DNA of 64,000 bases from Octopus sinensis (lineage: Eukaryota), in contig NC_043013.1 in the NCBI RefSeq assembly GCF_006345805.1, positions 57,474,001 to 57,538,000 of the forward strand, read 5' to 3'. Positions 14,937-45,536 of the stretch are shown piece after piece (the first letter of the stretch is position 1; each line of letters begins with the position of its first letter). The notes beneath the pieces were generated by a model, which did not search any database, was not told where the DNA came from, and saw only the letters and a program-made list of their open reading frames with translations. Both the position numbers and the translations under genes were made by a program.

Positions 14937-15118
14937 AGGACTGAAATTTGTGGGGAGGGGCGCAGTCGATCACATTCACTCCAGTGCTTCACTGGTACTT
15001 AATTTATTGATCTCGAAAGGATAAAAGGAAAAGTCCACCTCGGTGGAATTTGAGCTCAGTACCGTAAGACGAAACAGAGATAGGTATTTCGTCCAGCGTG
15101 CTACCAATTCTGCCAGCC
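14937..15118 (-). mobile_element. tRNA-derived SINE, monomeric form (family targeted by the Tx1)
   Basis: Minus strand CTGGCAGAATTGGTAGCACGCTGGACGAAATACC..GAGCTCAAATTCCACCGAGGTGGACTTTTCCTTTTATCCTTTCGAGATCAATAAATTAAGTACCAGT aligns with 22141-22497 and 42324-42535. Confidence 0.8.
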
Positions 15119-15616
15119 CGAACCCGTATAGGCTTTAGTAATAATAGTCACATAAATATTCAAGGAGAAAAACAAGTAAACCATCTCCTATAAGTAATTC
15201 TTCTGAGCAAGAATCAAAATAATAGTTTAGTTTTCTATCTGAAGAATTACAGACAGGACATGTATACCTGCGTCACTCCTATTAATAATGTAACATATGT
15301 AATGCGGATTAAATAAAACATTTTTCCATTTTTCTCTTTATTTATGTGTATGTACGTAATGTATGTCAGTATATATGTATGTCGGCATGCTTGTCTGCAG
15401 GATTCGTTTTTAATTCGAAGTAGGTACAGCTATAAAAGCGTGGAAATATTGGGTTAAGAAACCCTTTAAATAGAAAAAAAAAACATGTCGAAGACTATTA
15501 CTCACAGATTTATGTTTCGAGTTCCATTGCTGTAATCTAAATATTACACGTCTCTCAAACTTTCTAAATTCTTATGGCATAAAAGATCTATAAGTACACC
15601 TGTGTGTGTGTTGTGC

Positions 15617-15677: not shown

Positions 15678-16229
15678 CACACACACAGCGCACATTTCTA
15701 GTTGAAAGAAGTAGAATAAAGATAAACGTTGTTGTTGCTGAACTACATTTTAAAGTTAATTAACGTTATAATATTTGCCTTCTCGATGTCTGTAGGTCTC
15801 TGAGGTGGTGTGAGGTGCATTAATGGATCGGAGAACATCAATATTACGAGACAGATGAGCAAATAAATATGCTTCTCTTACAGATCGATGTCTTTTGCTA
15901 TTTAATGCAAATACATATTTACTTGGTTGAGATGTATCTGGATTTGGAATAGGTTGACAAACCATTTATTTCATTCCATCAGCGTAAAAGATTTTAAACA
16001 TCAGCTAAATAATCTAACACAAGTTCACTTTTATACTCAAAGCTGATTCCTTTCTGCCCCGAGTCGGCTTTTACGTGTGGTGCTGTTGTATAAAAATCCT
16101 ATTACCATTCCTGTCGCATATAATGGGAAGATCGCCTAAATCACCATTTATCTCTCTGCGTAGGCATTTAATTACATTCGTTTCGGTTCTGAGATCAAAT
16201 CCGATCGATATCCGATGCGGCTAACTTAT

Positions 16230-16672
16230 TATTATTGAGTGAGAGAGCAGTGCATGCCATCAAAGTGACACTGGGTTAAAATATAAGAAGCCCTGTATAC
16301 CCATCATCACTGCCTGTCTGATAGGGGTACACAAGGCACATGCATCACAACCAGTCATGTACCCGTCATGGTGATCTCATATCAAGATAAACAGTGCATG
16401 ACCTTGCAGGTGGGGCTCAGAATTTTTTTCAGGTCGAGTAACTCATCCAGCTCAAAAGGAACTTCAATAAGGATTGTTAAAAGATATTGAACGAAATGCC
16501 CCTGTTTCCAAAGGTGAATTATTCAAATCCCGTAAAATTTCCCTCAACATATGGCTATGATATTCCCTCACTACTTCTCGTGATCACAGATGCACATATC
16601 GTCAGCCACTAAGGGAAACGTTCATCCGGTTAAGGTCAAACAACTGACAAGCAAGTCTGTCGTATTGAGTAG

Positions 16673-16673
<1 letters not shown>
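16230..16673 (-). mobile_element. Interspersed repeat, probable LINE 3' UTR with (AAT)n tail
   Basis: Ends on the minus strand in CACTGCTCTCTCACTCAATAATAATAA. Recognised from memory as a common octopus repeat; no coding motifs seen. Confidence 0.4.
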
Positions 16674-16707
<34 letters not shown>

Positions 16708-16734
16708 CATTATTATTATTATTATTATCAAATG

Positions 16735-16800
16735 AAAGCGGCGAGCTGGCAGAAACTTTAGCACGCTGGGCGAAATGCGTAGCCGTATTTCGTCTGTCGC
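16735..16800 (+). mobile_element. 5' half of tRNA-derived SINE head (A box), interrupted by the Tx1 LINE
   Basis: GCGGCGAGCTGGCAGAAACTTTAGCACGCTGGGCGAAATGCGTAGCCGTATTTCGTCTGTCGC matches the head of the intact copy at 44180-44236 (minus). The SINE sequence resumes at 22141. Confidence 0.9.
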
Positions 16801-16936
16801 ACATGTGTTCGTGAAGTAAGAATTGCTGTTTCGTGGTGTTAATATTGTTAACAACTGTTGTTTCTTGTTAAACTGTTGAATAACTTAACTGTTGGAGTTT
16901 TCAATTGAAAACACTTAGTGCTTGTGGTAGCACGCG

Positions 16937-18112
16937 TTGTTCATTCCCCCTTTGGGGGGAAGAATGTCGTCTAGCATGGAGCCTACCGTTGGAGCAGAAA
17001 TACTTGTTTCTCCTGTTGAGAGGAGGAAATACATGTCCGGCGAGGAGCCAAATACAGACAAGGAAATAGGGGTTTCCCCCGCTACAAGAAGGAATAGCAG
17101 ACAGGATAATATATTTGATATTTTTGGAGATGTGTCTGAGAGCTCGTCAGAACTTTCACCAGAAGAGTTTCCGACTCTGCCAAAGAACAAAGGCATTGTG
17201 TCGAAGAGAATAATTGATGTGCCTAGCATCCAGATAGAACCAAAAAATGGAAAAAAAAGTTTTGCGTTGGCTGCTGGGGGTGGAACCCAGATACTGTCGA
17301 CGAATAAAAGCGAAATTATGAAATACAGCAAAATGATGGAAATAAATGACAACGGTGTGAAAATTGAACCTCCGCAAAAGTTATTACAGGAAGAAAAGCA
17401 AAAAAGCAATAATTTTCAAAACATATTGTCTACAAAAAGAAAAATTGAAAGAATGTCAGAAGAGAAAATAGAAAAGTGCTTAAAGCCAATATTGGGCGAC
17501 GTAGTATTTCTGAGAAGAGGAAAAAAATTCGGAACGGTGGAAGTAAGGTTCACAAATAAAGAAATAGCACACAAGAACTCAGTTGAAACGTTGAAAACGA
17601 ACGACGTGGAGTTAATCCCTATTATATGGGGATGAGGACGTCGCGAATAAAAATTACAAGGGTCCCGCCAGAGGTCGAACCTATGTGGTTGTTGGCGGCA
17701 GTCCTAATCAAAGAGGTAGAAAAAATTACTCTCCTCCAGGCTACCGCTACGGAAAACCCACTGGGATGGTAAAACAATTAATCTTCTCATTCAAGCGGAC
17801 CCTAAAATAATTCAAACAATTCCTGAGACAATTGAGGTAGGGGAGGAGAACCTCGTGGTGTTTGTTGAGGGCCGAAAACCTCGATGTTTTTTATGTGGTC
17901 AATTAGGCCACATTCGAAGGAACTGCAAGGAAAATGAAGAAGAGGAGGAAGAGGAGAAAAAAGACAAAGAGGAAGAAGATAAAGAAGAAACAGATGAGAA
18001 AAAAAACAACAAACAAAAGAAAAATACAACCAGCAACCCAGCCGAGAGCGGCGACTACTACAGAACAACGACCAAAAAAGACTGCCAGAAGAGAAAGAAG
18101 AAAAAAGCATAA
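16937..18112 (+). pseudogene. Tx1 ORF1 (gag-like nucleic-acid-binding protein), frameshifted
   Basis: ORF 16937-17635 continues after a frameshift (MRTSRIKITRVPPEV..) into 17855-18112, which has CFLCGQLGHIRRNC (CX2CX4HX4C) followed by an acidic/basic tail. Confidence 0.8.
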
Positions 18113-18495
18113 TAGCCGTATACACTAAAGATACTGAGCTCATGAGAGACATTCAACTCATAAAGACTGTAAAAAAATTGATAACCTTTCAGAGGAATTT
18201 ATCAATTACGACATATATGAAGTCTCAAATAAGACTTATAGAATTCTACAAAATAAGTACAGAAAGACTGTATCTTCATTGAGATTAGATTTTAACAAGT
18301 CATATTTCATGATTACCAGCCCGATCCCGCGAGAAAAGGAAAAGGTGGAGATTCCCCCTCCACCTGATAATTCTGTGTCGGTGGTGAGACGGGATTTTGA
18401 CAAATCTATTTCCCAAGACCGTCCACCTCCGACCCTGGATCAAAAAAGGTGGAGGGTCCCCCTCCACCGGACAATCCTAATTAAACAGGTAAGTG

Positions 18496-21400
18496 ATGGC
18501 TATTCACATTGGTTGTTTAAATGTTCATGGCCTGTTGTCAAGCTGGAAGCAAGGACGCTTTCTGAATGACATCAGGTCGAGAAATTTGGATGTAATTGTT
18601 GCAACGGAAACCCGGGTGAAGGGGCCAAGAGATCTGCTCCCCTCCTGAACGGCTACGAGAAATACGTTTCTCCTGAGGGCGGGAGGTGGGGGTGGGGTGT
18701 TGGTCCTACTAAAAAGAAACCGGGTAGCCGAGAAAAAGTTGGTTTTTTCTGACCAGAAGGCAGGCTGGTCGTTCTCGACTTGACATTCAGTTGTGGCAAG
18801 ACAATCAGGCTGGTCGCTATTTATGCACCAAACATTATTGGCCCGCAAACTGAATATTTTCGTGGCCTAGGAAAGTTCCTAGCCACGTCGCATTCACTAG
18901 TAGTGTTAGGAGACTCTAATACAATATGTGCAGCACACACAGATTGTGTTGGCTCAAACTCGAACATGAACAGAAAATGTAACCCAGGCTTTCGGGATCT
19001 GCTAAGTCAATTTCAGCTAGCAGATCCATATAGGTTGGAGCACCCGAACACTCCACAGTGGACGTGGTCAAATAGTGACGGGTCTACCAGAACATATCTA
19101 GATAGGATTTTAATTAGAGAAAAAGATAAGTCCATAGTTGAGTGTCCACAGTTTTTTCTAGTCAGCTACAGTGACCACAAGATGGTTACCTGTAAACTGA
19201 CGGTAGATAAGTTGCATAGACAGGGATCTGGCTACTGGAACTCAATACGTCACTTTGGCGATTGAGGAGTACAGAAAGCGGATCAAGATGTTAATACAGA
19301 GGGCATTAACAGGTACCATCATTAATAACAAATGGTGGTACGCCCTAAAAAGAGCCATCAAATATGAGTCTATTAGGTTTAGCATAAGTTTAGCTAAGAA
19401 GGGACGTAAAATAGGAGATGGTCTAGCTAAGGAACTAGAAGAAGCCTGGAGGACTGGTAATACAGACCAAGCGAGGGTGAAAAGACTGGAGTTAAACCAG
19501 CATCTTGAAGCCCACCACATGGGAAGTATTACCAGAGGTAAGTTACGTGCAATGGGAAGTGAAGGAATCAAAGCCGCTGGATGGGCCCGAGTGGTGGAAG
19601 CTCGGCAAGGAAATAGTTCCTCTATTCGGTCTTTGACGAATCAAAATGGTGTATTGATAAACGAACCCGAGAAAATGTGTGAGGTCTTTCGGGAGTACTT
19701 CGCCCAGCTGTTCGGGGGTGACGGCGGTCCTGGTGGTGGGAGAGCCCTCGAGGACTTTCTTACCGGGCTGCCGTGCCTCTCGGGGTCGGATGCGGAGTCT
19801 TGCGAAGGGCCAATCACACCTGAGGAGGTGATGGAGGCTTTGGCCGATTGTAAAGCGGGTAAGTCACCGGGACTTGATGGTCTTCCGTACGAGCTGTATA
19901 AATGTATGCCAGACTTGTTCGGGCAACTACTGACTGACGTGTACGCGAACTGGAAACAGAATGGGTTTATCCCCAGATCTGTGCGCGGGCAGTAGTGACG
20001 TTGGTCAGAAAGGACCCGGACAAGGGGGACGTTCTAGAGAATTTCAGGCCCATCACTCTGTTAAACGCAGAAGTGAAGATTTTGGCCAAGGTTCTAGCAA
20101 AAAGGTTGGCGCGTGTCGCGAATGGTATAGTCGGGGAGGCACAGACATGTGCCATCCCAGGCAGAACCATTCAGGATACCCTCCATCTTATTCGCTATAC
20201 CATAGAGAGGTTTGGTAATAAATCTGGCAAAGGTGGGGCATTGGTGCATTTGGACCAGTCTAAAGCTTTTGATAGGGTTGACCATCGATACCTCGCGACT
20301 GTACTTGCGCGGTTTGGCCTGGGCCTTGGCTTCCTCAGGTGGTTTATCGCTTTGTACCACAACATTGACTGGATAGTTCGGGTGAACGGTTTCCTTTCGA
20401 AGCCGTTCTGCATCAGACGCTCGGTTCGTCAAGGATGTCCGCTTTCACCACTTTTGTATGTGATGGCTCTCGAGCCATTACTGCAAAATTGAGTGGCATC
20501 CCGAGAGAACCAGGACTAGAGGAGTTTGTTACGGCTTTCGCGGATGATATCACTATAGTGTAACCACGGGGCACGCCTACGTGAAGTAGGTAAGACTATT
20601 GAGGCTTACGAGGAGGTAGCAGGAGCAAAGATTAACCGGGAAAAGTCGGTCGGCTTGCAGCTCGGCACCTGGGTTAGCAAGTCGATGCCTTCAGACAGTG
20701 TTGTTAGGCGCTGGACGGAGGGACCGGTTAAGTTGCTGGGAGTCTGGTTTGGACCAGGCCTCCAGATAGAGAAGAACTGGACGGAGGTATTGAGCAGGGT
20801 GGCTGCAGTAGTCAAGACCTGGTCTTGGCGGTGGCTATCCCTGAAAGGGAGGGCGGAAGTGGCCAATGTGTTTATCGCATCGGTCATTACCTACCGCCTG
20901 ACCGTCGTGCGCTGTCCGGATTCATGGTTGATCAGGTTGGAGAGACAGCTCTTTCGCTTTTTGTGGAAGGGCAGGTCGCCACTTGTGAAACGCTCTGTCT
21001 GCTGTCAAAAGCCTTTAAATGGAGGTTTAGGGATGCCTTGGTTAATGATGCGCAGACATGCGTTGAGGTTGAGGCACCTCTGGATTCTCCTGGATAGTGA
21101 ACGGGTGTGGTCTCCGCTGGCCAGACAAATGTTCCCTGAGTTCAAGAGTTTTTGCGAACAGGAAGCCTGGTGTTCTCGTAGACCGAGGTCGAGTGAGTGG
21201 CATAAAGAGTGCCGTAAGGCCCTCTTGCTGTTCCGGTGCTCGGGCAACGCCAGCGGTGGGGGTTCTACACGGATTTTATATAGTGGGTTGGTAGAGTCTG
21301 AATGCGACGATGGCCTGGGGTCGACTCTATGTCTCGGATTTATTCAACTGGACAGCTTGTTTCATCGTACATTCGGGTTGAGAACGTTGGACAACTTCCA

Positions 21401-21890
21401 AAAGTCCTTAACCTGGCAATGCTACAGAGGTGCCTTGCCCGTTTGGGATAAGCTCGCAAGACATGGTAAACGTCAGTCGCCGACCTGTCCAAGATGCGGG
21501 GGGGGGGACAGGGAAACCGTCCCTCACGCTATTGTTCAGTGTCCGGAGATAACTGAAATGTGGGCTTATGCTGAACATCTGTTGTCCGGCGAAGGAAGAG
21601 TACGGCTGTCGACTGAGTCAATTATAAAAATTGACCCACCGGGAGTTCTAACGAACGAAGGTAAGAATTGTTTTCTCACGGTTGTAGCAATAGCAAAAGA
21701 GGCAGAATGGAAGACTAGGATAAAAGGAATTAAGACAGGCAACTTTATCTCTGGTGACAATTTACGATCCTTTTTTTCTTTTCATTTGAAAAGGAAACTG
21801 TGGCTGGAGAAGAGGTGTCTGTCAGAGTGTACGTTCCAAAAGAGATGGAAGTATGTTGCACGAGTGTTGTGCGTGCAAGGAACCGTGTGA
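18496..21890 (+). pseudogene. Tx1 ORF2 (APE endonuclease, reverse transcriptase, C-terminal CCHC), several frameshifts
   Basis: APE: MAIHIGCLNVHG, ATETR, IYAPN, LGDSN, YLDRI, SDHK. RT: KSPGLDGLPYE, NFRPITLLN, DQSKAFDRVDH, RQGCPLSP, FADDI, INREKS. Tx1/L1-like: WSWRWLSLKGRAEVAN, GGLGMP, CPRCGGGDRETVPHAIVQC. Confidence 0.92.
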
Positions 21891-22140
21891 ATAGACGAGG
21901 AAAAAAAAAAAAAAAGGAAAAATAAAAAGGTATCAGCGGTAGATCGGGGCTTGTGGGATCGGAGCGTAACTTGATCATCGCTTCATTTGTATTGTTTTTG
22001 TACTGTGTATTCCATTCGATTTTTATGTATTGTATTTTATTTTTGATGTCACATTTATGTAAAATCATATCGATTCACTGATCCCATCAGTTGTACTGTC
22101 CATATCTATGTTTGGCCCCCGGTGGGCAATAAAGAAATTC

Positions 22141-22497
22141 GTATTTCGTCTTCCGTTACGTTCTGGGTTCAAATTCCGCCGATGCCGACTTTGCCTTTCG
22201 TCCTTTTGGGGTCGATAAATTAAGTACCAGTTACGCACTGGGGTCGATGTAATTGACTTAATCCGTTTGTCTGTCCTTGGTTGTCCCCTCTATGTTTAGC
22301 CCCTTGTGGGTAGTAAAGAAATAGGTATTTCTTCTGTTATTATATTCTGTGTTCAAATTCCGCCGAGGTCGATTTTGCCTTTCATCCTTTCGGGGTCGAT
22401 AAATTAATTACCAGTTGAGTACTGGTGTCGATGTAATCGACTCATTCTCTGTCCCAAAATTGCGGCCCTTGTGGCAAAATTTGAAACCATTATTATT
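22141..22497 (+). mobile_element. Composite SINE body: 184-bp unit with Tx1-like tail (22141-22324) plus resumed host SINE body and (ATT)n tail (22325-22497)
   Basis: Two tandem copies of GTATTTC..GTTCAAATTCCGCCGA(G/T)G..GGGGTCGATAAATTAA..ACCAGT separated by a tail that matches the LINE 3' end at 34 of 44 positions. Confidence 0.88.
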
Positions 22498-25199
22498 AGT
22501 ATTATCACTATATTTACTGCTGAACACGACGTATTTTCGAACGCTCGAAGTAAATCTTGTTTAAATGCTTTCTTTCTACCCATTTGTTACCGTTTTTCCC
22601 CCGTTTAAACATTGTTACAGTTTGTTAATAGAAACATTAGGGACCTGGCAATGGGTTCCTGCGTTCGTTTCGTCCCTAGTGGTGGGCTATATTCGACCCC
22701 AAAAATGTCCGGCGAACGTTTCAATCAAATATAAATCAACAGGATGGCGAAACGCACCTTGAAAGATTTAAGAAAAGAAAAAAAAAAACTTCCCCTCCAC
22801 AAAAGATGTTTTTGAATGCTGAAGATTTCTTTCCCTCCGTTACTCATAATATTACAGGAGAGGGGGAGGAAAAACCAAGAGCACTAAAGTTCAAAGTCCA
22901 CCTCACAGTAGCAGTAGTAAAACATTGGCACCTGCAGTGAGGGCAATGATAGCGGTGGCGGCGGCATCGGCGTCAGTAGTAGTAGCATTAGCAGTATTAT
23001 TAGTAGAAGTATTATCAGTGGTATTAGTATTAGCAACAGCAACGCAATTCAGAACACAGTGGATTTCAGCGGAGAAAATAATCCTACTATTGAAGGCGAT
23101 GACGAAGGTGTGCAGAGTGGCAATGGTGGGAGTGGTTACAATTCCACCACCATAACCATCAACAGGAATAGCAGCAGCAGCTGCAGCAGTAACAACGGCA
23201 ACAAGAACAACGTAGATTAAGTTTTCCTCAGTCTAATGAATATCACCTAAGTTTACAGTTTCCAACTGTATTCATTTTTTTCTTCTTTAGAAACCTTCTA
23301 CGGTCACTAATTGGCATCTATCTCTCGCTCTATCTAATCATATGCATATACATACATGTATATATATATTATATATGTATATGCAGTTACAGTTTATGTG
23401 TATTACTTTTGCAGTAAATCTTTTGCCAGTCGATTATTTAAATCAGTTCTCAATAAAAATCGTTTGATAAGCAAATTCGTATTAATTTTGTTTACATTCG
23501 TCAAGTGAAGCACCGGCCTGTCTTGTTGTTGACATTATTTCGTTAGTTCCCATCCTCATATTTCGTTAAAGGTTTAATCAGTTCCTGTCAACGTTTCTTT
23601 TTAAGTGGTAAAGTAAAAAAGAAATATATATATTAAAAACAAACGTCTTCACTTACGTAAAACATAAAATAAAACACATTGTTTTTATTATTTGCCATTC
23701 TCTTAACACTTTGGTCACATTAACTCAATGGATAAAACTTACGGTTCCACTTGTAGCAGCAAAACTAAAAGAATAATTCCATTAGTGATTTTGTTCTGGA
23801 GAATGAAACCTCATTCTGTCAAATAAAATCTTGCAAAGAATTATGGGTAAAAAATAAAGCAAAGAAAAGACAAAAGAAGAAATATGGCAGCGAGGCGGGA
23901 GGGGCGTGAGTAAGAAATCGAATTTTTGATTTATGGAAATTTGTCGACAGCAATTTTTAACCAATGTAGATCCATGTAGCTTATTTTATTCAACACTTCC
24001 AACTATTTCTTAGAATAGTTTTTAACTCCTTTTTCTATTTATTTACATTGGTTTCATTTTTTTTTTTACACTTAGGTGTTTTACTAAACGGAATATTGCT
24101 GGCAACAATCAAATTATCCCTGTACCATAATTCTATACTGCTTCCAACGACATCACTTTGAATCAACAAGTTGGAATATAGGTTTTGTGTTTCGCTAGAA
24201 AAGCAACAAAAGTATATATTTTTTCTTTATGTTTAACTGCTATTATTTGAGGAAGGATATTTTTAAAATCCTATTCTTCAATCTGTGTGAATCATACATT
24301 TTATTTAATATATTTGTTTTTCTCTCTTCAGCAAAGTGAACAGATATATATATTAAAAACAAACGTCTTTGAAACACATTTAGGCACAACAACGCAACAA
24401 ATTGTTAACTAGTTTCTATCCTGAAACATGCCAAGCTGTCACCATCAGCACTTTTACATTTTTACATGTCTCAACTTCATCATATATTTGTGAGCAATGT
24501 GTATGTGTGTGTGTGCGTGGCTGTGTGTGCGCGATGCAGTTTCATGCGTGTTTACATATGTATGCAAATACGTGTTTCCATATGTGTGTAGGTGTATGTA
24601 TATAAGAGGGAAAAGCACACAGGCAAGCAGATAACTATATATAAATGTACATACCTGTCTGTCGGTCAGTCAATCTATCTAAATTATATGTGTGTGTGTG
24701 TGCGTGTGTACTTATGTATTTATATATATATGTAGGTTTATTATACATCTATATACACATACATTCTTACATACCGACAGACAACAGACATACAGACAGA
24801 TAGATAGAGAAATAAATACATACTGACAGATATTTAAGTGCAGATATATAGAGACAGGCGCACAGACAGAGTTTATCATCATTATTTTACGTCCTTTTTT
24901 CCATACTTGCATTTGTTAGACGAGTATTCCCTATAATAATTTCTTGCGAAAAACGTCTGTCCATAACCATCATTTTACGGCGTAACTTTAAGTTCAATCT
25001 CCGCCAGTTCTTCCTATCTGTCTTTATTAACCTTTCGTTTTGGTGACATTATCTAACTGGTCTCTTTTATCCTTCATTTGTGCATCACTTGTTCCTAGAA
25101 ATGCAGGCTTCTTATCAGCCCTCTACAGCTGATTTTTTTTAATATTCAGCTATCTGTGCTCCATCGCACCCTCAAAGTAAAAACCTATCGGAGCAACGT

Positions 25200-27470: not shown

Positions 27471-29905
27471 AACCTCTAACTCTTCATAGTCATGATGATT
27501 GGCCAAATCCTCCTTGCTGTTGACTTGAAATTGCTGAGGAATCTGTATTACATCATCATATAATTGTCAAACATAATAATGAGACAGGCGACTGTATTAT
27601 GATGACAATATTTGTATCTTATTTACACAGCGCCATGTATGAAAATAACCAAACTTCCTCACCAACATCCACATACATGCTTACACACACACGCACGCGC
27701 ACACACATACCTGTTGTTTTTATGTGACTCACAGATAGGAATGAACGAAAGAAGAACATTAAAAAGTATAACGAATACGTTGAGAGAGCTATTGAAACGG
27801 TATTCACATGTAACGGTAAATATTAAGAATTAAGTATCTGTAACAAAGGGGCCCGAAAATTTGACGATGATGTGTTGGTCAAGCACGTTGGATCCTTGAA
27901 AATCAGCATATGATTTTAAATGTGTACATTTGTTGACAATATGCTTAACCTTGTGAAATTACTGCTGAGGAAAATGTGTGACAGATGTGAGAGAAAGGGC
28001 AATCAGTAAATGTGGTAGACATGACACTTAGACAGATTAATCAAGTGTGAGTAGATGAATGTCAGTGTGAAACGAATGAGTCGGGGGAGAAAGGAAAGAT
28101 GCTTACAGTAGATTTCGTTTGACCCAGTGACATCGTTTCTCGTTCAGCCCCCCCCCCCGCCTCCTCAACCGTCTGCAACACGCTGTCACGATATCTAGGA
28201 GGGAACTGACCCCTTTGATGGTCAGCGACTGCATATTTATAACAGTCTGCAGTCGATAGAAAGATGGTCAAGATCCGGTTCGGCTGAACCTAATTTCACC
28301 AAGCTGGTTATTAAAAACTCATCAATCATTGCGTTAATTGATTGGGGAAAGAAGTTTTTCCCGCCGCAAATTGATTTGGCGGGGGAAAGTGCGATCAGTA
28401 ATTCTGAGATGCGGTCTCAAATCTTAAGCGATAGAACTAATATTCGTTCTTTATATGAGCCTTATCACTCGGCAAGAACTTAAAACAAACTTGAAGAAAG
28501 AAAAGAAATTTCGTTTTTTTCTTGTTTTCTCCTTTTACCATTATCAAAGCAAATATTTCATTCAAAACGATGGATTATATTTCAGTTACAATTTATATGA
28601 AATAAAATTTCAAAACAGTCTGCGTGTCTGTAAGGATATATTTTACGTATATATATACGGCCGGCTTTTTCAGTTCCTATCTACAAATTTTACTCGCAGT
28701 TATAAACACAAGTCACCTGCCGAAATATTCTACGCAGTGGGGCGAGACTCTAAGGCGATTTCGTAGTGAATCTTCTTATAATACAACCATTCCTGCGCCT
28801 AAGAAACTCTGTGAGTGGACATTGTAATTTTTCATTGATAATAACTGTTGAGTTACATTCCACAGTTTTATGATTTAATTTTTGTCTGTGCGATAAAGTT
28901 TTATATAAAACATTGCAGGAAAGCATTTTTTTACCTTTAGATACATAATCACGAGCCTTATTGCAGCAGACAGGTTTGAGTTCTCCGGCGAAATGTTATT
29001 TCCCTCGCTGATTCAATTTGTGGCAGGAAATATTCGTGTTAATAGCTGCAGGTTTAACAGCGACATCTTTAAAGTGTTTTCCAAAAGGACATGGATATTA
29101 TACAAATACAAGCTGTTTTCTTTTAATCACTTTGACAATGTTTAAATAATGTTATGATAGCACAGAGATTATAATAGTTATCAAAATCTAATGCCTATTC
29201 ATTCAAAACGGCACTCTATCATGGTGATGCTTAATATGAAATTCCTGGCACTCCAAACTCTGTGGAAAATGGCAAATTATGTGGTATCTATTTCTCCTCT
29301 AATGACACTAAGCTGGTGCGTCTGACTTAATGCTAATGTCTATTTTCATTGCTCTCCTTCTCTCACGCCCTCCACCACACTCTTCCCTCCCCAGTAACAC
29401 GCACTTACGCCATTATCATGCATCTCTACTTTTCTCTCGCTCTCATTTTCTCAGTCTCCTTTCTCTCTCTTTTCCCCTCTCTATTAGTTTCCTATTATTG
29501 GTTCACATTACCTTAATGTTACTATGTCTACCAATCATAAACTGTCTATGACCTACTTTGGTTAATAGTTGCTTCCATATATATATATATATATATGTAT
29601 ATCAGATGGAGGGAGAGAGAGAGATTTTGGGGTTTTATATCAGGTATGACGAGAAATAAAATAATAGATTAGAGCGATGCCAACGGACAAATTGTCGATT
29701 TACTAGAATTCTGATGTAAATGGTGATAAGGAAGTGTTTATAACTAGATGCAGAACGAATATCTAAGAGTACTTAATTGACACAGAACAGTTTTCCGTTC
29801 TTACAGATATGTTTACAGTATTAGTTTATATATAAACATACATATATATACATATATTTAAATGTATGTATATATATATATATATATATATAACTATATA
29901 TATAT

Positions 29906-29967
<62 letters not shown>

Positions 29968-29968
29968 T

Positions 29969-30335
29969 AGCCGCAGGAATGGCTGTGTGGTAAGTAGCTT
30001 CCTTACCAACCACATGGTTCCGGGTTCAGTCCCGCTGCGTGGCACCTTGGGCAAGTGTCTTCTGCTATAGCCTCGGAACGACCAAAGCCTTGTGAATGGA
30101 ATATGAGACGGAAACTGAAAGAAGCCCGTTGTATATATGTGTGTGTGTGTGTGTGTGTGTATGTCTGTGTTGACAACCAACAATGCTGGTGTGTTTACGA
30201 CCCCGTCACCTAGCGGTTCGGCAAGGAAGACCGATAGAATAAGTACTAGGCTTACAAAGGTTAAGTCCTGGGGTCCATTTGCTCCAGCATGGCAAGAGCC
30301 AAATGACTGAAACAAATAACAGAATAATAGAATAA
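29969..30335 (+). mobile_element. tRNA-derived SINE, near full length
   Basis: GCAGGAATGGCTGTGTGGTAAG (A box), GGGTTCAGTCCC (B-box-like), CCTTGGGCAAGTGTCTT core-like segment, internal (TG)n. Aligns with 55671-56075. Confidence 0.9.
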
Positions 30336-30353
30336 TACACATATACACATGTA

Positions 30354-30396
<43 letters not shown>

Positions 30397-30427
30397 ATAT
30401 ATATATATTTATATATATATATATACA

Positions 30428-30463
<36 letters not shown>

Positions 30464-30471
30464 CATGTATG

Positions 30472-30502
<31 letters not shown>

Positions 30503-30814
30503 ATACATATATATATATTATATATATATATATGTATGTATACGTTCATATATGTAAGTATTCGTATGTTGTATACATATATGTATATATTTGTATTTAT
30601 GTGCTATCTGATGAAGGCAAAGCATTTCTCATGCAGAGCCAGAAATCCGGGATCTGAAATTATCCAGTATTTTTTTTTTGTTAGTTTTTTTCTTTATTTG
30701 CCTTTTCTCTTGGTGCTGTGTGAATATTTAATGTGGTTTTAGAGTCAAGTTTTGGCTGCTATAACTAGCATGGTGGTATATCTTAGATACCCTTAATTAT
30801 AATTTTATATATAT

Positions 30815-30845
<31 letters not shown>

Positions 30846-30866
30846 CATACCTACACACACATATAT

Positions 30867-30902
<36 letters not shown>

Positions 30903-31688
30903 CAGGGAATAGGATGCGTGGCGTTCGATCATATAATAATATAAATAATATATAAATATATCTACATATATGTAGATACTTTCATATATAACCAGAAAGG
31001 ATGAAGAACAAGAGAGGGAGAGAGATAGACAGAGAAGAGATAGTAAAGGTAGAAGAGTTCGGTTCTTCATCCTTTCTGGTTTTCTCCCCCACTCTTTCTT
31101 GTTCTTCTCCTCCCCTATTCACCGTTCCCTCTCTCTCATTCCTCCTCCTCCTCGATTTTCTCGTCGCTGACACGTGACGAAAGATAGTCTTTCTGCCTAC
31201 AACCTTCGAAAAGAAAAATCGTGCTTTACTGTCTCCTTCATTACCTCGTCTTCCTCGCCTTCACAGCATATTATTTCTATCGTTTAGGCTTAACAGCTTT
31301 CACCGTTTGCTTTTACTGTTTTTTTTTCTCATTGTCCTGTTCCTTTTACTGTTTTGTTTTCACTGTGCTACTCTTGTTAGCACTTTCACCCTCCGCAAAA
31401 AATTCCAAATTTTATTTAATTTGCTTTGCGGGAAGGATTGTGTCAATGAAGTCGCGTCTTGTCCTTGCCTTCGAAACTTGATGTCTCGTTTCTCTGTTTG
31501 TTTATTTTTCGTTGTTCGAAAAAAAGTTCGTTTCTATCTTTTTGTTTTTATGTTTTCGTTTCTCATTGTGTTCAAAGTTTTTTGATGTCCTGTATCCATA
31601 TATGCGTGTATACATATGTATATACATGTATAAATATATATGTATATATATGTATATATATTTATGTATATATATATGTATATATATG

Positions 31689-31725
<37 letters not shown>

Positions 31726-31753
31726 AAAAAAGCAACAAGAATGGATCAATATA

Positions 31754-31838
31754 TCGGTACAATTGTTTCGTACGAAGATATCTTTAATAAGGCTACAAAA
31801 ATTGCAGTAAATATAGGTGGCTCGTACTCATCAGCCGA
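31754..31838 (-). ncRNA. Type I hammerhead ribozyme (canonical core)
   Basis: TCGG-CTGATGA-GTACGAG..TTCGTAC-GAAACAATTGT-A-CCGA. Confidence 0.8.
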
Positions 31839-32313
31839 AAAAACACCCGAGATTCTCAAACATCAAAGGGGGTAATGTTACACTCGTGAAACATCATGGA
31901 GAGTTCTATAAAAATGAGAATTTAGATAACAGATTGGTTTCTAAGAGTTCAATTAGTATTACACAGTCATATATCAGGTTATTAAAAAGTTTTTTCAAAA
32001 CATCTTAGTTTTCCAGAAAGTGAAGATAAAAGTGAGTGTGTGAGTTTATCCGTATTGAAGAAAGTTTGATTCCTGGAGATCTGATGAGAGGTATCGTACT
32101 CACAGAATATGTGTTTGTCCATATATAGTTCATAGTAAAGTGTGAATCAAGCTGTGTGAAGATATTTTGAATACAATCGTGCGAAATTTCTCAAAACTAC
32201 TGTGTTATAATCCGAGGAAGAAGCGTAGTCTTATAGTGGAGACGAACAGGCTGCTATAGAAATCTACAAGAACCACAGAGCTAAAGGAAGAATGTTGAAT
32301 TTCGGGTGTTTTT

Positions 32314-32398
32314 TCGGCTGATGAGTACGAACCACCTATATTTACTGCAATGTTTGTAGCCTTATTAAAGATGTCTTCGTACGAAACAATTGTACCGA
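32314..32398 (+). ncRNA. Type I hammerhead ribozyme (canonical core)
   Basis: Stem I TCGG/CCGA, CTGATGA 32318-32324, stem II GTACGAA/TTCGTAC, GAAA 32383-32386, palindromic stem III ACAATTGT, predicted cleavage after GUA at 32394. Confidence 0.82.
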
Positions 32399-32549
32399 TA
32401 TATTGATCCATTCTTGTTGCTTTTTTCCTATTTGTAATCACCCCACTTCGTCGAATGGTTAACATCATACAGATTTCTGGTGCATCCAAGTTAGGTACCA
32501 TATTCATGTGAATTCAATAGAACTCACTTGAATCTTAATTGCTTAAACC

Positions 32550-32990
<441 letters not shown>

Positions 32991-34509
32991 ATAGATTGAT
33001 AACCAATTCGACTCTGCAGCCTTATTTCTGGAGGAATTTGTATAAATATTCCCAACTTGAAGCAAGTATATTCAACACTACTTTGCTGATTTTTCCGTCC
33101 CCCACATTATTTTTCCATCGCGACATTGTGACAATACATCAGAGATAAGTAAAAGACATGGCGACCAAAGGTTAATTACTCTATTAAACATTGAAGCTTT
33201 AAATGGCGAATGGCTGAATCACATTGACATAGTTTCCACTAAAGACTTTAATAACCTGACCAAAAGACAAATTAACAAACTAAAACAAACAGCAAAAATT
33301 AAATACTCATATAAAGAATGAAGCTAATTAAAACAAAGGCAAAAGGAATCAAATGAGGAAATTCTCAAACGCGTAGCATTAAAAATTTATCAGTTATTTG
33401 AGATGTCATATTTATCTTAGACATTTCTAATTAACTATTCTAGATCCTCTAATCTGAAAACTGTTTGCTCTTAAATAATCTACTCTCTCTTTTCCCTCCT
33501 CCCTCACTCCTCTCTCTCCCTCTCTTTCTCCCACTCATTCCCCACTCATTCCTCTCATTCTTTCTTGTCATTTTACTTTATCACACTCTCGTCCTGTATT
33601 CTCTACTTCGCTGTTCTTTCTATATCACACTCTACTATCTTTCTCTCTTATTCCATGATTACTTCATGACTTAGTTTTACTGTTCTCTCTCTCTCTCTCT
33701 CTCTCTCTATTATACTATTCTTTCTAGTTTCCTCATACATACTTCATCAACTCCAACTTACGTTTTACTCTCACAAAATCTACCTCTCTCTGTTCGCGTA
33801 CCTATTTCCATTATACTATGACCACATCTTATTTCCTATCTGTACTTCCTTTCTCTTTCTACTACTCTTTCTTTCATTCGTATTCTCCTGTCCTTATCAG
33901 AGTTATGCTATATATAACAATAAGATAGTTCTGCAAGAGAGAAGAACACTACAGGCCATACGAAGAATACAACCAGAACCAGAAGCAAGAAGATGAAAGA
34001 CGAAGTCACTGTTTCTGAAGCGGTCATTCTGTTCTGGATATCAGCTCGCGTAGATAGATTATGAATAATTCAGAAGGTATAGCAACAAGCTAGAAAATCT
34101 AAAAATATTTGAATTATGGACATCAGTCCAATAATCAAAGAATTTCGCAAACCTTAGTTATGGACATGTTGATCATAAATGACCTGTACAATCGTCTGTA
34201 ATATACAGATGAGCTCCGACATATATCACTAAAATTGTTCTTTGTATCTTTTTTATTCTTGCTCGCTCTGATGATAATCCTCTGACCATCTGGTTCTGCC
34301 TCTAGACCCAATACCTGCATATTTCTTTGATGATACCATCGGAAGATAGAAAAGGATTCTTAAATAGCGATTCATGCAACAAATATCACTCAGAGTTTTT
34401 ATTCTATTTCAGAAATAAAATTTGTATATGATATATGATATAAGATATACACATACATAGATACATATATATGTGTGTGTGTATCAGACTCACACATACA
34501 CAATTAATC

Positions 34510-34549
<40 letters not shown>

Positions 34550-35815
34550 ACATGTACACAATACATACGTGTGTATGTGTATACATATGTGATATGCGAT
34601 ATGATATCATGATATTCATATAAATTTGATTCTTTATATATGAATATATGAATATGATATTTACGAGGAACATACACTGAAATACTTGCAATCAAGAGAC
34701 GTTCAGTTTCGTGGTAAAACAAGGTATGCTATTAAAACATAACAGTGATGTTCATTCGTCGATTTAGTGTTGAATTATTCAACCAGAATATAAATTGCAC
34801 ACTCTATGACAGCACAAAAGAAACCAAAATGACATGCAGTGTTATTGAAGCGCAGATTGTTAAATCATTCCTGTTGCTGAAAGTACTTAGCCTGCTCGTG
34901 TTTTTCGCATATGCAACGCAATACATTGTGTTGAGTACTATAATATCTATGAAGATAAAATATTTATATAAATATGATACTATCGCTGACCAATCTATAA
35001 TGCTTTAAAAACAAACGATATTCGGAGAGAAACATAATCAACTTTGTGCGATCAAATATTTCTTAAAAGTAGTCTATGAAAGCATTAGCATTAAAAGGTT
35101 TAATATCCAATGTAGAGGATGAAAGAAAAATGGCGAAGGTTGTATATAACGATTCTAATACTGACTTTAATTATTCCGTTGGCAAAGAATTGCTACAGTC
35201 TTCAACTAAATGAAGATTGATATCTCCTCATATATAATTACTAGTATTTAGTGCCACTCTACCCAGGTACGATCGACATCTTATAATACCATTTCTACAG
35301 ATCAATATGATTAGAAACCTGCCTCAAGTCTTACAAATCCCATTTTATATGATAGCATGCGTAATTATGATAAATGTAGGGTTTTGTTGTTGCGATTGTG
35401 GTTGTAGATGATCGATTTTAGAATTCTCCTGCTAATATCCTCATCATTCTTCTCTCCATTCCTATCACCGTTATTCCTTCTCCCTACTCCTCTTTCTCTT
35501 CATCCTCAGCATCATCATCGTCATCATCATCACCATCATCATCAACAACATCAACAGCATTATTTATATCCTTATGATCGACATCATCAACACCAGTACC
35601 AGTACCAGATACATGTAAATTAGGACTATTCGATGTTTAATCGCCGCCTCCACCAAACGCACCAACACCAACGCCACCAGGCAGGACCAGTAACAAGAGC
35701 AACGCATTAGCCTCATCTACTGCACCAACGACACAGCAGCGTCTTTCGATGTTCCGTCAACAGATTACAGAAAATAAAAAAAACAGCATATATAAAACCT
35801 CTATCACCATGACCA

Positions 35816-35819
<4 letters not shown>

Positions 35820-35858
<39 letters not shown>

Positions 35859-35995
35859 TAATAATGATAATGACAAGAACAATAGCAACAACAATAGTAA
35901 TAACGAGGAATAGTAACAACAAAAGTAGTAGTAGCAGTAGTTGTTGTTGTAGCAGCAACAGCAGCAACAACAACAGCAACAAAAGCAAGAACAAT
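35820..35995. repeat. Compound trinucleotide arrays (AAT, AAC, AGT, AGC)
   Basis: Direct reading; these explain ORFs 35713-35994 and 35864-36067. Confidence 0.9.
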
Positions 35996-36469
35996 CGATT
36001 ATTCCGTAATAATGTTAAGATACATCATTTCTATTATGAGGTGGCCATTACTTGTTTCTCGACATAATCCCTGTTTAGTTAAACTGCAATGTGCCTCGCC
36101 TTGCCTGGCCTCCCGTTGCCTTGATGTGCATTAATATTAATGTAAGATAGAACAAGCAGATAGGACAAGAATATTTCAACAAGAATTTACTGGAGATCTT
36201 TCAGATAAGAAACGGAAGAGAAATATAGACACTGGATACGGTTGATCGATTAAGTAGGTCAGCTGTGGCTAAGATTTAAGATAGACGTCATGCATGCATA
36301 AATGAATACACATGTATGTGTCTCTAAATGTATGTGTGTGTGTGTGTAAATGTACAACTATGTAGAGAGACAGCTGCGAATATATGCAAACACACTCATA
36401 AATATCAATGCATGTCTGTATGCACATGTATTATTTATTTATTTATTCATGTGGTATCAGATATTCAGA

Positions 36470-37470
<1,001 letters not shown>

Positions 37471-37736
37471 GATATGTAAGCCTATGGGTGGATAATGAGC
37501 ATTATCAGATCCATTTAAATCTCGCAGATCTTAAATTTCAAAATGAAATCGATATTTTTCTGATCTGCGAGAGTTACGAATTGTTTTGAAACTAGCATTT
37601 CCCATTATTAACTTTCCTATTTACGACAAAGTTTGATGTGTACACACACACACACACATATATACATACATATATGTGTACACACACACACATATATATA
37701 TATATACTCTTTACTTGTTTCAGTCATTTATATATA

Positions 37737-37780
<44 letters not shown>

Positions 37781-37856
37781 TTATATTTTATATATATATA
37801 TACATATATATATACAAACATACGTGTGTTCGTGTGCGTGTGTGTATATGAGTATT

Positions 37857-37890
<34 letters not shown>

Positions 37891-39017: not shown

Positions 39018-39023
39018 ACCACC

Positions 39024-39099
<76 letters not shown>

Positions 39100-39641: not shown

Positions 39642-39642
<1 letters not shown>

Positions 39643-39719
<77 letters not shown>

Positions 39720-39720
39720 C

Positions 39721-39794
<74 letters not shown>

Positions 39795-39825
39795 ATCTAT
39801 CTATCTCTCTATCTATCTATCTTTC

Positions 39826-39907
<82 letters not shown>

Positions 39908-42229: not shown

Positions 42230-42230
42230 G

Positions 42231-42323: not shown

Positions 42324-42535
42324 AGGCGGTGAGGTGGCGGGGTCGTTAACATGCCGGATACGATGGTCGGAATCACTTCGTCCGTCTTGACCACCTGAGT
42401 TCAAATTTTACCGAGGTCGACTTTGGTTCACATACCTTAGGGGTCAATAAAATAAGCGCCAGTTGAGCACTGGGGTTGATGTTCTCGACTTACCCCATTC
42501 TTCCAAATTCTTCCAGATGTTCAGAAATTAAAATC
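42324..42535 (+). mobile_element. tRNA-derived SINE, diverged monomer (family targeted by the Tx1)
   Basis: AGGCGGTGAGGTGGC..GAGTTCAAATTTTACCGAGGTCGACTTTGG..GGGGTCAATAAAATAAGCGCCAGTTGAGCACTGGGG. Confidence 0.8.
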
Positions 42536-43843: not shown

Positions 43844-44236
43844 AATAATCCTTTCTACTATAGACACAAGGCCTGAAATTCTGAGGGAGCGGACTAATCG
43901 ATTACGTCGACTCCAGTGTTTCACTGGTACTTAATTTATCGACCTGAAACGATGAAACGCAAATGCACCTCGGCGGAATTTGAACACAGAATATAATAAC
44001 AGACGAAATACCTATTTCTTTACTACCCACAAGGGGCTAAACACAGAGGGTACAAACAAGGACAGACAAATGGATTAAGTTGATTATATCAACCCAAGTG
44101 CGTAACTGGTACTTATGTAATCGACCCCGAAAGGATGAAAGGCAAAGTTAACCTCGGCGGAATTCGAACTCAGAACGTTGCGGCAGACGAAATACGGCTA
44201 CGCATTTCGCCCAGTGTGCTAACGATTCTGCCAGCT
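43844..44236 (-). mobile_element. Composite (dimeric) SINE with internal Tx1-like tail, no LINE
   Basis: Head 44236-44196, 184-bp unit 44195-44012 ending TGTACCCTCTGTGTTTAGCCCCTTGTGGGTAGTAAAGAAATAG, then GTATTTCGTC restarts the host body 44011-43844. Confidence 0.9.
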
Positions 44237-45536
44237 TTCCCCGTGAAACATGACAAAATAATAACAGACCATTTTTTCGTCGCCACTTAAAATACTATTA
44301 CTGTGAACACCTATTCTTACTGCTTTAACTATTATTTTCATGAGAACGGCAACTTTAAATAAACAATAACAACAACAACAATAAATGTAATATAATTTAG
44401 TATTCTTCTGTGAAATATTATCCTTCATATAATTAATTCAGTTTGATGCTAACTTTCTGACAAGACGACCGCATTTTTATCCTCCTTCGACAATAAATTA
44501 ATTTTTTGCTAATTGTTCTGTAATTTTTAGTTATGGAATTTACTACCCAATCTTATATAAATATTTAACAGTTTCAGTCTTCTGTTTGCAAAATACACAT
44601 TATCCTACATTTGCCACGTCTATTTTTAACATTTTAAAGCGTTTTAAAATGCAAGATCATTAACTTTAGCTAATGTTACTATGTGAACATATATTCGAGT
44701 GAAGGGAAACAGAGTTTATGTTAATGGCCCTTCTATGCCCACTTATCTTAAGTACTTCTCATGTTAAACTGGAGACTGCTAAGGGATCTAAATATTTTAT
44801 TTACTCTTAGAATTGATATGGCGTTCTTATAATATCTTTGTTTGTACATTAGCATTTTAGCTGCTGGTATTAAAATAGCTGCTTGTTTTTCCAGACAGTT
44901 TTAAGGTGTTTTCTGTGTAGAGAGATAATGTTATTATTTGCTTCTCATTGAACTTCGTTTCCTATTAAGTGATTATTCACGTTTAGTGCAACTAAAACAA
45001 ATTTTATTGCTTCTATTATCGTGAATTTCAGAGAGTTCAAATGTAAAAATAGAAGCTGAAACGTATTTTAACGTGTAGTTTGTAGACACAACATCGTAAC
45101 TGTTAAATATTTATATATAATAGGTCAGTGAAGGTGTTTGAATTAAAAAAAGAACATGACTAAATATGCACCGACTTTTAGTTTCACATCTCCGCCTCCA
45201 TCACGAGGTTCAAATCCCACTAAAATTAGGTAATTGTAATCGATCTGAGATATTGATAATTCAAAAAGATGTTTTATATCAACTGAAATATAATTTCATT
45301 AAATTCTCTGATCAAAAAATGATGGAACTGAACCAAAAAGGATACGTGTTCTTGGTCGCTAGCCTTCCTACAAACAACAGACAGCACCTTACCAATAATG
45401 CTATGAACGACTGGCACTCGCATGTACTGATAAACAAAACTATTCAGGCATGGGTTCCACTCCGGTCAAAAGAGAGACACAAATGATTTTATTAACCGAA
45501 TCCCTTTATGGAGGTCAAATGATTTTTTATAAACGT

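What the first reader, a model, noticed from the sequence alone, without database searches (positions are those of the whole stretch)
22097..22324. A 184-bp SINE unit carries the Tx1 3' end: a putative Tx1-dependent SINE
Seen: LINE 3' end TGTCCATATCTATGTTTGGCCCCCGGTGGGCAATAAAGAAATTC (22097-22140) versus unit tail TGTCCCCTCTATGTTTAGCCCCTTGTGGGTAGTAAAGAAATAG (22282-22324), 34 of 44 identical by hand. Both keep a GCCC-N5-GGG(C/T) stem-loop just before an AATAAA-like motif. The monomeric SINEs at 14937 and 42324 lack this tail. Known: stringent-type SINEs borrow the 3' tail of their partner LINE, and Tx1-dependent SINEs are uncommon (crocodilian SINEU is a proposed case). Inference: a SINE subfamily switched to, or added, a Tx1 partner and so inherited its target specificity for its own parent family.
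Basis: partly seen in the sequence, partly recalled or inferred. Interest (0 to 1): 0.85.

Follow-up and report, generated by a model that had tools for sequence, protein, structure and literature searches.

The report
Octopod SINE sharing its LINE's tail
A short mobile element in an octopus-like genome ends in the same small hairpin-containing tail as a neighbouring L1/Tx1-type LINE, and element and LINE have inserted at exactly the same spot inside copies of that short element; this is a clear but fairly ordinary LINE-SINE partnership with a self-targeting twist.

Summary
The LINE 3' end (22097-22140) and the tail of the 184-bp unit (22282-22324) match at 34 of 42 aligned columns. That gives a local score of 25 against a null of 7.4 +/- 1.4. 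Both are followed by GTATTTC.

The LINE (about 16800-22140) belongs to the L1 superfamily. I could not separate Tx1 from L1 by phylogeny. It sits inside a tRNA-like SINE with an 11-15 bp target duplication starting GTATTTCGTCT.

LINE relatives in Octopus sinensis and Argonauta hians carry the same tail, and the O. sinensis tail matches the unit better still (38/43). Argonauta SINEs also carry this tail. The pairing is therefore old in octopods, not a recent partner switch. The 4-bp hairpin shows compensatory changes.

The "unit" is the left half of a composite SINE (head + unit 1 + unit 2). A second copy lies at an unrelated locus (44242-43850, minus strand) with an identical junction, so the composite probably spread as a family.

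LINE relatives are not found in SINEs. They sit at TAT(T/C) sites and microsatellites. The GTATTTC in the SINE head fits this short preference. Self-targeting is suggested, not proven.

This is a new member of a known kind.

The parts
16673..16728 (.). (ATT)n tract, the outer target of the SINE composite; ATT repeats resume after the composite at 22489-22498
   Evidence: TRF; sequence
16740..16784 (+). tRNA-like head of the interrupted SINE (GGCGAGCTGGCAGAAACTTTAGCACGCTGGGCGAAATGCGTAGCC)
   Evidence: 93% identical to the head of the second composite
16785..16799 (+). upstream copy of the LINE's target-site duplication (GTATTTCGTCT exact; up to 15 bp with 2 mismatches)
   Evidence: one search compared
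16800..22140 (+). L1/Tx1-superfamily LINE. ORF1 16937-17635; CCHC knuckle 17855-18112; endonuclease fragment 18780-19265; RT 19995-20492; zf-RVT C-terminus 20655-21890. ORF2 is broken by frameshifts.
22097..22140 (+). LINE 3' tail: hairpin 22115-22127 (GCCC/CCGGT/GGGC), then AATAAAGAAAT at 22128-22138. No poly(A).
22141..22155 (+). downstream copy of the target-site duplication (GTATTTCGTCTTCCG), the 3' half of the anticodon-stem-like region of the SINE
22141..22324 (+). unit 1 of the composite SINE (184 bp): box-B-like GGTTCAAATTCC, conserved core GGGGTCGATAAATTAAGTACCAG, LINE-like 3' module
22261..22324 (+). LINE-derived 3' module of unit 1 (about 64 nt; strict match 22282-22324), with hairpin 22299-22311 (GCCC/CTTGT/GGGT)
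22325..22488 (+). unit 2 of the composite. It starts again at GTATTTC, carries the diagnostic TGTTATTATATTCTGTG, and has a standard short tail with GGCC-CTTGT-GGC.
43850..44242 (-). second, uninterrupted composite SINE: head 44242-44196, unit 1 44195-44012 (184 bp), unit 2 44011-43850. Outer target duplication ATTATTTT(G/AA)TCATGTT.
14940..15122 (-). monomeric SINE of the same superfamily with a decayed short tail
42324..42505 (+). monomeric, diverged SINE of the same superfamily, directly downstream of a (TATC)n array

Best explanation
The 184-bp unit is the left unit of a composite tRNA-derived SINE (head + unit 1 + unit 2) in an octopod genome. Unit 1 ends in a 45-64 nt module copied from the 3' end of an L1/Tx1-superfamily LINE clade that octopods share.

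The core of this module is a 4-bp stem with a 5-nt loop, followed by AAUAAAGAAAU. I infer, by analogy with stringent LINE-SINE pairs, that this core is the handle by which the LINE's reverse transcriptase picks up its own RNA and the SINE RNA.

The LINE's endonuclease prefers to nick just 5' of TAT(T/C). The SINE's anticodon-stem-like segment contains GTATTTCG, so resident SINE copies are themselves targets.

I infer the following history. A long-tailed SINE RNA was once reverse-transcribed at that site in a short-tailed SINE. The 5' junction was resolved in register, through the homology between the new cDNA and the target. This produced head-unit1-unit2. The composite then spread as a unit using the tail of unit 2. 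In the copy at 16740-22488 a full-length LINE later used the same site, leaving an 11-15 bp target duplication.

Shown: the tail homology, hairpin covariation, identical junctions, target duplications and unrelated flanks.
Inferred: recognition of the tail by the RT, in-register joining, and amplification as a composite.
For: - Tail homology. The window LINE against unit 1 scores 25, versus a null of 7.4 +/- 1.4. The O. sinensis LINE against unit 1 gives 38/43.
- The tail belongs to the LINE. The O. sinensis 3' UTR aligns to the window LINE's 3' UTR over 229 nt and ends in the tail in a non-SINE context.
- Conservation. The tail is found in Argonauta LINEs and in at least 10 SINE-like copies there.
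- Hairpin. 94.9% of cells are paired, against 47% or less when the partners are slid. Pair 26/36 is G-C in 16 sequences and C-G in the window LINE and both unit 1 copies.
- LINE class. Endonuclease, RT, zf-RVT and a CCHC knuckle are present. Human L1 ORF2p matches at E = 4e-33 over residues 7-409, while R2 reaches only 1e-17.
- Same site. The SINE head lies upstream of the LINE, and GTATTTCGTCT is duplicated on both sides. The junction AAAGAAATAG|GTATTTC is identical in both composites.
- Composite family. Identities are unit1-unit1 86.8%, unit2-unit2 80.2% and unit1-unit2 68-75%. Both unit 2 copies share TGTTATTATATTCTGTG. Each composite has its own outer target duplication, and the flanks are unrelated.
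- Target motif. In Argonauta 6 of 13 tails are followed by TATT within 3 nt, against a background of 1.8% (p = 5e-8). Two target duplications start with TATT. LINE relatives lie in (TATC)n twice, in (ATT)n and in (ATTT)n.
Against: - Only two composites and one LINE copy from the source genome could be examined. That genome is not in any searchable collection.
- No monomeric long-tailed SINE was seen in the window, so a source for unit 1 in this species is inferred from Argonauta.
- The unit 1 pair (86.8%) is somewhat less diverged than the unit 2 pair (80.2%). Independent later insertions of unit 1 would predict this.
- The O. sinensis LINE copy is followed by GATGTTC, which is not a TAT site.
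- The hairpin is short. MFE folding of single tails is no better than folding of shuffles.
- The three C-G sequences may reflect a single evolutionary event.
Confidence: 0.6

Rival explanations
1. A monomeric, Tx1-dependent SINE with the long tail is currently or recurrently mobilised, and it inserts sequence-specifically into the GTATTTC site of resident SINEs. Each composite in the window is then an independent nested insertion.
For: - The junction is identical to the LINE's own insertion point.
- Unit 1 copies are more alike (86.8%) than unit 2 copies (80.2%), as expected if unit 1 arrived later.
- Tandem re-use of one nick site by two SINEs is seen in Argonauta and is reported for SINEU (PMC4494074).
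Against: - Both composites share the same unit-2-specific 17-nt variant. They also share the same in-register 5' join with a single head, and exactly 184-bp units.
- The heads are 92% identical, so they are not older-looking than unit 1.
- Relatives of the LINE and the tailed SINEs of Argonauta are not inserted in SINEs.
Confidence: 0.25
2. A one-off chimera made by template switching. While copying a LINE RNA at the GTATTTC nick, the reverse transcriptase jumped after about 45-64 nt to a SINE RNA. Unit 1 was never a free tailed SINE.
For: Template switching is the accepted way in which SINEs acquire LINE tails and extra heads (PMC4494074). No free long-tailed monomer was seen in the window.
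Against: The 64-nt module, including the pre-hairpin segment TCCATTTGTCTGTCCTTGTTTG, is 77% identical to the ends of short Argonauta elements. The join between SINE body and tail therefore predates this event, or the module circulates on non-autonomous elements.
Confidence: 0.1
3. Tandem duplication by unequal crossing-over or replication slippage, with the resemblance to the LINE tail arising by chance or convergence.
For: TRF reports a 184-bp tandem period. Arrays of SINEs built by recombination are proposed for bivalves (PMC11481361).
Against: - The two units carry different tails and differ by 25-32%.
- The tail similarity lies far beyond chance, and it extends to LINEs of two other genera.
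- The same structure occurs at an unrelated locus with its own target duplication.
Confidence: 0.03

Closest known systems
SINEU and Tx1-Mar of crocodilians (Kojima 2015, PMC4494074)
   Same: A non-autonomous element and an L1-superfamily, target-preferring LINE are found at the same target inside another repeat family. Tandem insertions are frequent. The partnership is inferred from the shared target.
   Different: - SINEU heads derive from U1/U2 snRNA, and the target is a Mariner DNA transposon. Here the head is tRNA-like and the target lies in the SINE itself.
- A 3' tail shared with the LINE is directly visible here.
- The target preference here is much weaker and shorter (TAT(T/C)).
- Tx1 membership of this LINE was not tested.
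UnaL2/UnaSINE1 of eel and other stringent LINE-SINE pairs (Kajikawa and Okada 2002; cited from my own knowledge and)
   Same: The SINE carries the conserved 3' end of its LINE, with a short stem-loop close to the terminus. This is the expected recognition handle for the RT.
   Different: UnaL2 belongs to the L2 clade and ends in short repeats, and its recognition was shown experimentally. Here the LINE is L1-superfamily, ends in AAUAAAGAAAU(U/C) without repeats or poly(A), and nothing has been tested.
Microsatellite-targeting Tx1 elements Kibi, Koshi and the crocodilian (TTCC)n/(TTTC)n group (Kojima and Fujiwara 2004, as summarised in PMC4494074)
   Same: Relatives of this LINE end directly at (TATC)n, (ATT)n and (ATTT)n tracts.
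   Different: The repeat motifs differ. Only 8 junctions were seen. No phylogeny links this clade to Kibi or Koshi.
Composite or dimeric SINE families (Alu, Twin, B1-dID; definition in SINEBase, PMC3531059) and tandem-like SINE arrays of bivalves (PMC11481361)
   Same: Two SINE-derived units are joined head to tail and dispersed as one element. The bivalve arrays include the form 'first SINE with complete head, then repeated units'.
   Different: Here the junction coincides with a LINE insertion site and with a LINE-type tail. This points to retrotransposition into a SINE rather than to unequal recombination or a dimeric tRNA precursor.

Membership tests
Stringent-type LINE-dependent SINE | 3' tail homologous to the 3' end of a LINE of the same genome | tested here: met
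   34/42 to the window LINE, score 25 against a null of 7.4 +/- 1.4; 38/43 to the O. sinensis relative
Stringent-type LINE-dependent SINE | Pol III-type head (tRNA-derived, boxes A and B) | tested here: inconclusive
   ARAGORN and Rfam find no tRNA. By eye there is a box-B-like GGTTCAAATTCC and a head TGGCAGAATCGTTAGC. Unit 1 alone has no head.
Stringent-type LINE-dependent SINE | Dispersed copies flanked by target-site duplications | tested here: inconclusive
   Both composites have their own outer duplications. No free long-tailed monomer occurs in the window. Met for the Argonauta tailed SINEs.
Stringent-type LINE-dependent SINE | Mobilisation by the partner LINE depends on the tail | not testable with these tools
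   Needs a retrotransposition assay
Tx1 clade of non-LTR retrotransposons | L1-superfamily architecture: AP-type endonuclease, RT, C-terminal zinc-binding domain | tested here: met
   Pfam hits to Exo_endo_phos (weak), RVT_1, zf-RVT and a CCHC knuckle in the ORF1 region. Human L1 ORF2p matches at E = 4e-33 over the linker plus RT.
Tx1 clade of non-LTR retrotransposons | RT-domain phylogeny places the element with Tx1 rather than L1 | not testable with these tools
   No named Tx1 reference sequence was reachable. The 895 homologues are unnamed cephalopod proteins.
Tx1 clade of non-LTR retrotransposons | Sequence-specific target (one target type in more than 20% of flanks; criterion of PMC4494074) | tested here: inconclusive
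   Eight LINE 3' junctions: 1 in a SINE (window), 2 in (TATC)n, 1 in (ATT)n, 1 in (ATTT)n, 1 at TATTTTT, 1 at TAATTAC, 1 at GATGTTC. The sample is small and spans several families and species.
Target-sharing SINE/LINE pair (SINEU/Tx1-Mar type) | SINE and LINE preferentially inserted at the same position of one repeat family | tested here: inconclusive
   The identical nucleotide is used by the LINE and by the unit 1 tail in both composites. These amount to perhaps only two independent events, and the finding was selected because of this coincidence.
Composite (dimeric) SINE family | Same two-unit structure and junction at independent loci, each with its own target duplication | tested here: met
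   Two copies on opposite strands with unrelated flanks, identical junctions and shared unit-specific variants
Composite (dimeric) SINE family | [quoted passage not shown] | not testable with these tools
   The source genome is not in the searchable collections

The most novel reading that the evidence does not exclude
Octopod tRNA-derived SINEs, which make up about a tenth of octopus genomes and are mostly unclassified, are driven by an L1/Tx1-type LINE clade. Recognition goes through a conserved 3' hairpin.

The endonuclease's TAT(T/C) target lies in the SINE's own anticodon-stem remnant. The family therefore feeds on itself. Retrotransposition into resident copies, joined in register, builds head-(unit)n composites. 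This would be a retrotransposition-driven route to SINE multimers and to seeds of tandem repeats.
Probability: 0.3. Interest if true: 0.6.

Novelty: new member of a known kind. Interest (0 to 1): 0.45.

Why it matters
SINEs are the largest retroelement fraction of octopus genomes. In the latest O. vulgaris annotation, 893 of 900 recently active SINE families are 'unclassified' (PMC13282606). None of the papers I could search names their LINE partner.

A shared hairpin tail with an L1/Tx1-type LINE gives a concrete, testable candidate for the engine behind these expansions.

Stringent tail sharing with an L1-superfamily LINE is uncommon in animals. The coincidence of the SINE-SINE junction with a LINE insertion point offers a simple mechanism for how composite SINEs and short SINE arrays can arise by retrotransposition rather than recombination.

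It changes no general principle. LINE-SINE tail sharing, target-preferring Tx1-like elements and dimeric SINEs are all established.

Tried and rejected
None carries the SINE or LINE.
2. The SINE core 20-mer was scanned in genome contigs and viral contigs. Both gave zero matches.
3. I tried to survey what follows the tail through spurious ORFs in the protein collection. An X-padded query found no candidate.
4. I looked for LINE clade names among homologues. The 895 hits are almost all unnamed, so there is no Tx1/L1 label.
5. Loci from the ENA assembly ERZ21867824 (L126, L127) contain neither the SINE nor the tail. They come from a different cephalopod and were not useful.
6. P0004 is not on record. 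The short contigs L124, L125 and L128 end before the tail or lack a clean one.
7. ARAGORN and Rfam searches for a tRNA in the heads found nothing.
8. MFE folding predicts an extended lower stem (UCUAUGUU with AAUAAAGA). Only 55-70% of its cells pair, so it is no better than the controls and is not claimed.
9. Segmental duplication of the two composites is rejected because the flanks are unrelated.
10. Chance similarity of the tails is rejected.

Full report
**What the window is.** The sequence is eukaryotic with about 35% G+C. The LINE proteins it encodes find their best named relatives in Argonauta hians and Octopus sinensis, at 54-65% identity. No hit exceeded 67%. The source is therefore an octopod whose genome, or at least this LINE family, is absent from the searchable collections.

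**The observation.** A local alignment gives 34 matches in 42 columns and a score of 25. The LINE tail scored 7.4 +/- 1.4 (maximum 14) against 3592 other tiles of the window. It scored 7.8 +/- 1.5 (maximum 16) against 5000 dinucleotide shuffles. TRF independently calls a 184-bp period over 22105-22442.

**Anatomy.**
- A SINE head lies at 16740-16784, upstream of the LINE. It is followed by GTATTTCGTCTGTCG, and then LINE sequence begins.
- The LINE ends at 22140 in ...GGGCAATAAAGAAATTC and is followed by GTATTTCGTCTTCCG.
- The LINE (about 16800-22140) is therefore inserted in a SINE, in the same orientation. Its target-site duplication is 11 bp exact, or 15 bp with two mismatches.
- The LINE has an intact 232-aa ORF1, a CCHC knuckle, an endonuclease fragment, an RT and a zf-RVT C-terminus. 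ORF2 is split by several frameshifts.
- Its linker plus RT region matches human L1 ORF2p at E = 4e-33 across residues 7-409. R2 proteins reach only 1e-17.
- It is thus an old, inactive copy of an L1-superfamily element. No named reference was reachable, so Tx1 against L1 remains untested.

**The unit is half of a composite SINE.**
- Downstream of the LINE come unit 1 (22141-22324) and unit 2 (22325-22488). Both start with GTATTTC.
- A second element on the minus strand (44242-43850) has the same build, but with its head attached and no LINE. It consists of a head, a 184-bp unit 1 ending in the identical GCCCCTTGTGGGTAGTAAAGAAATAG, and then GTATTTC and unit 2.
- Each composite has its own outer target duplication. 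These are ATT repeats in one case and ATTATTTT(G/AA)TCATGTT in the other. The flanks are unrelated.
- Unit 1 copies are 86.8% identical and unit 2 copies 80.2%, while unit 1 against unit 2 is 68-75%. Both unit 2 copies share TGTTATTATATTCTGTG where other copies have TGCCGCAACGTTCTGAG.
- The simplest reading is one founding event followed by spread of the composite through the tail of unit 2.
- Independent nested insertions are not excluded. The slightly higher unit 1 identity leans that way.

**The tail belongs to a LINE clade shared by octopods.**
- The O. sinensis relative has a 3' UTR alignable to the window LINE's over 229 nt. It ends TTGTCCCCCTCTATGTTTGGGCCCTTGTGGCTAATAAAGAAATTG in a non-SINE context. 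This matches unit 1 at 38 of 43 columns, better than the window LINE does.
- Argonauta LINE copies end ...GGCCCTTGTGGCTAATAAAGAAAT(C).
- A metagenome-borne octopod LINE ends ...GGGCCCTTGTGGCCAATAAAAGAAATC.
- In Argonauta at least ten SINE-like copies in 22 kb carry the tail. Short elements there share 77% identity with the last 64 nt of unit 1.
- The tail is therefore a LINE 3' end, and its use by SINEs is old. A recent partner switch is not indicated.
- Standard short SINE tails in the window and in O. sinensis retain a diverged hairpin and an A-rich end. They are probably the same module in decayed or sister form.

**The hairpin.**
- In an alignment of 20 LINE and SINE tails, the four pairs of the stem are formed in 94.9% of cells. 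When the partners are slid, the figure is at most 47%.
- Pair 25/37 occurs as G-U, G-C and A-U.
- Pair 26/36 is G-C in 16 sequences and C-G in exactly the window LINE and both unit 1 copies. This compensatory swap also ties unit 1 to the LINE lineage of this genome.
- The helix is short, and single-sequence folding energies are not better than shuffles. A predicted lower stem is not supported.

**Target choice.**
- In Argonauta, 6 of 13 tails are followed within 3 nt by TATT, against a background of 1.8% (p = 5e-8).
- Two clear target duplications begin with TATT: TATTTCAAGGAA and TATTATCTTT....
- LINE relatives end at (TATC)n twice, at (ATT)n, next to (ATTT)n, and at TATTTTT. Only the O. sinensis copy does not; it is followed by GATGTTC.
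- Two Argonauta SINEs sit in tandem, having re-used one nick site.
- The endonuclease thus prefers a short TAT(T/C) motif, often in microsatellites. This is Tx1-like behaviour (PMC4494074).
- The SINE head's GTATTTCG, the 3' half of an anticodon-stem-like hairpin CGAAAT...ATTTCG, offers such a site.
- In the window, 5 of 6 GTATTTCG occurrences lie in SINEs, but only about 4% of the 134 TATTTC occurrences do. One LINE and the founding SINE event both landing there suggests some extra preference. The sample is tiny, however, and was selected for this coincidence.

**Mechanism proposed.** The LINE RT recognises the 3' hairpin module in cis and, on SINE RNA, in trans. The endonuclease nicks 5' of TAT(T/C). 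Target-primed reverse transcription of a long-tailed SINE RNA then took place at the GTATTTC of a resident SINE. The new cDNA is homologous to the target, so second-strand priming can occur in register. This gives one head followed by two units, with a 12-bp duplication (GTATTTCGTCTG) hidden in the repeat. The LINE later used the equivalent site in one composite. Recognition by the RT and the in-register join are inferences.

**Comparison and novelty.**
- The closest case is SINEU/Tx1-Mar in crocodilians, with a shared target inside another repeat and tandem insertions. Here, in addition, the tail is visibly shared and the target is the SINE itself.
- Stringent pairs such as UnaL2/UnaSINE1, microsatellite-targeting Tx1 elements, composite SINEs and bivalve SINE arrays cover the remaining features.
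- Papers on octopus repeats list abundant tRNA-Core and tRNA-Deu or unclassified SINEs and active L1-Tx1 families, but name no partnership.
- I rate this a new member of a known kind, of moderate interest to transposon specialists.

Noticed in passing
L002:14810-15310 (Argonauta hians): Two tailed SINEs lie head to tail. The second is flanked by the duplication TATAG(G/A)(C/T)CAGCA, and the first ends exactly at its upstream copy, so one nick site was used twice.
   Followed up: partly
L129:12765-12807 and L129:18834-18916 (Argonauta hians): Two LINE 3' ends of this clade abut (TATC)n microsatellites directly, which suggests microsatellite targeting by one Argonauta family.
   Followed up: partly
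window 41996-42305 and 39642-39836: Two long (TATC)n arrays. The first ends 19 bp upstream of the 5' end of the monomeric SINE at 42324. No TATC follows that SINE, so a link to the target preference is unclear.
   Followed up: no
proteins P0001, P0002, P0004, P0006; locus L123: Octopod LINE sequences sit in records labelled as metagenome contigs, and in one case as a protein of a Herbaspirillum sp. MAG. This is most likely host DNA contaminating those assemblies.
   Followed up: no
window 18340-18374 and 18444-18478: A 35-bp direct repeat (86% identical) inside the LINE, between the zinc-knuckle region and the endonuclease. The nearby stretch 17928-17994 is a Lys/Glu-rich 24-bp repeat.
   Followed up: no
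window 16000-22000: The LINE is much richer in G+C (40-50%) than its surroundings (about 35%) and has a positive GC skew.
   Followed up: no
window 22880-23220: A low-complexity stretch rich in AGC/AGT/GGC triplets just downstream of the composite SINE. It looks like a coding-type trinucleotide repeat or a decayed exon. I did not analyse it.
   Followed up: no
window 29800-39900: An unusually dense series of long (TA)n and (AT)n microsatellites, up to about 400 bp (32551-32949).
   Followed up: no
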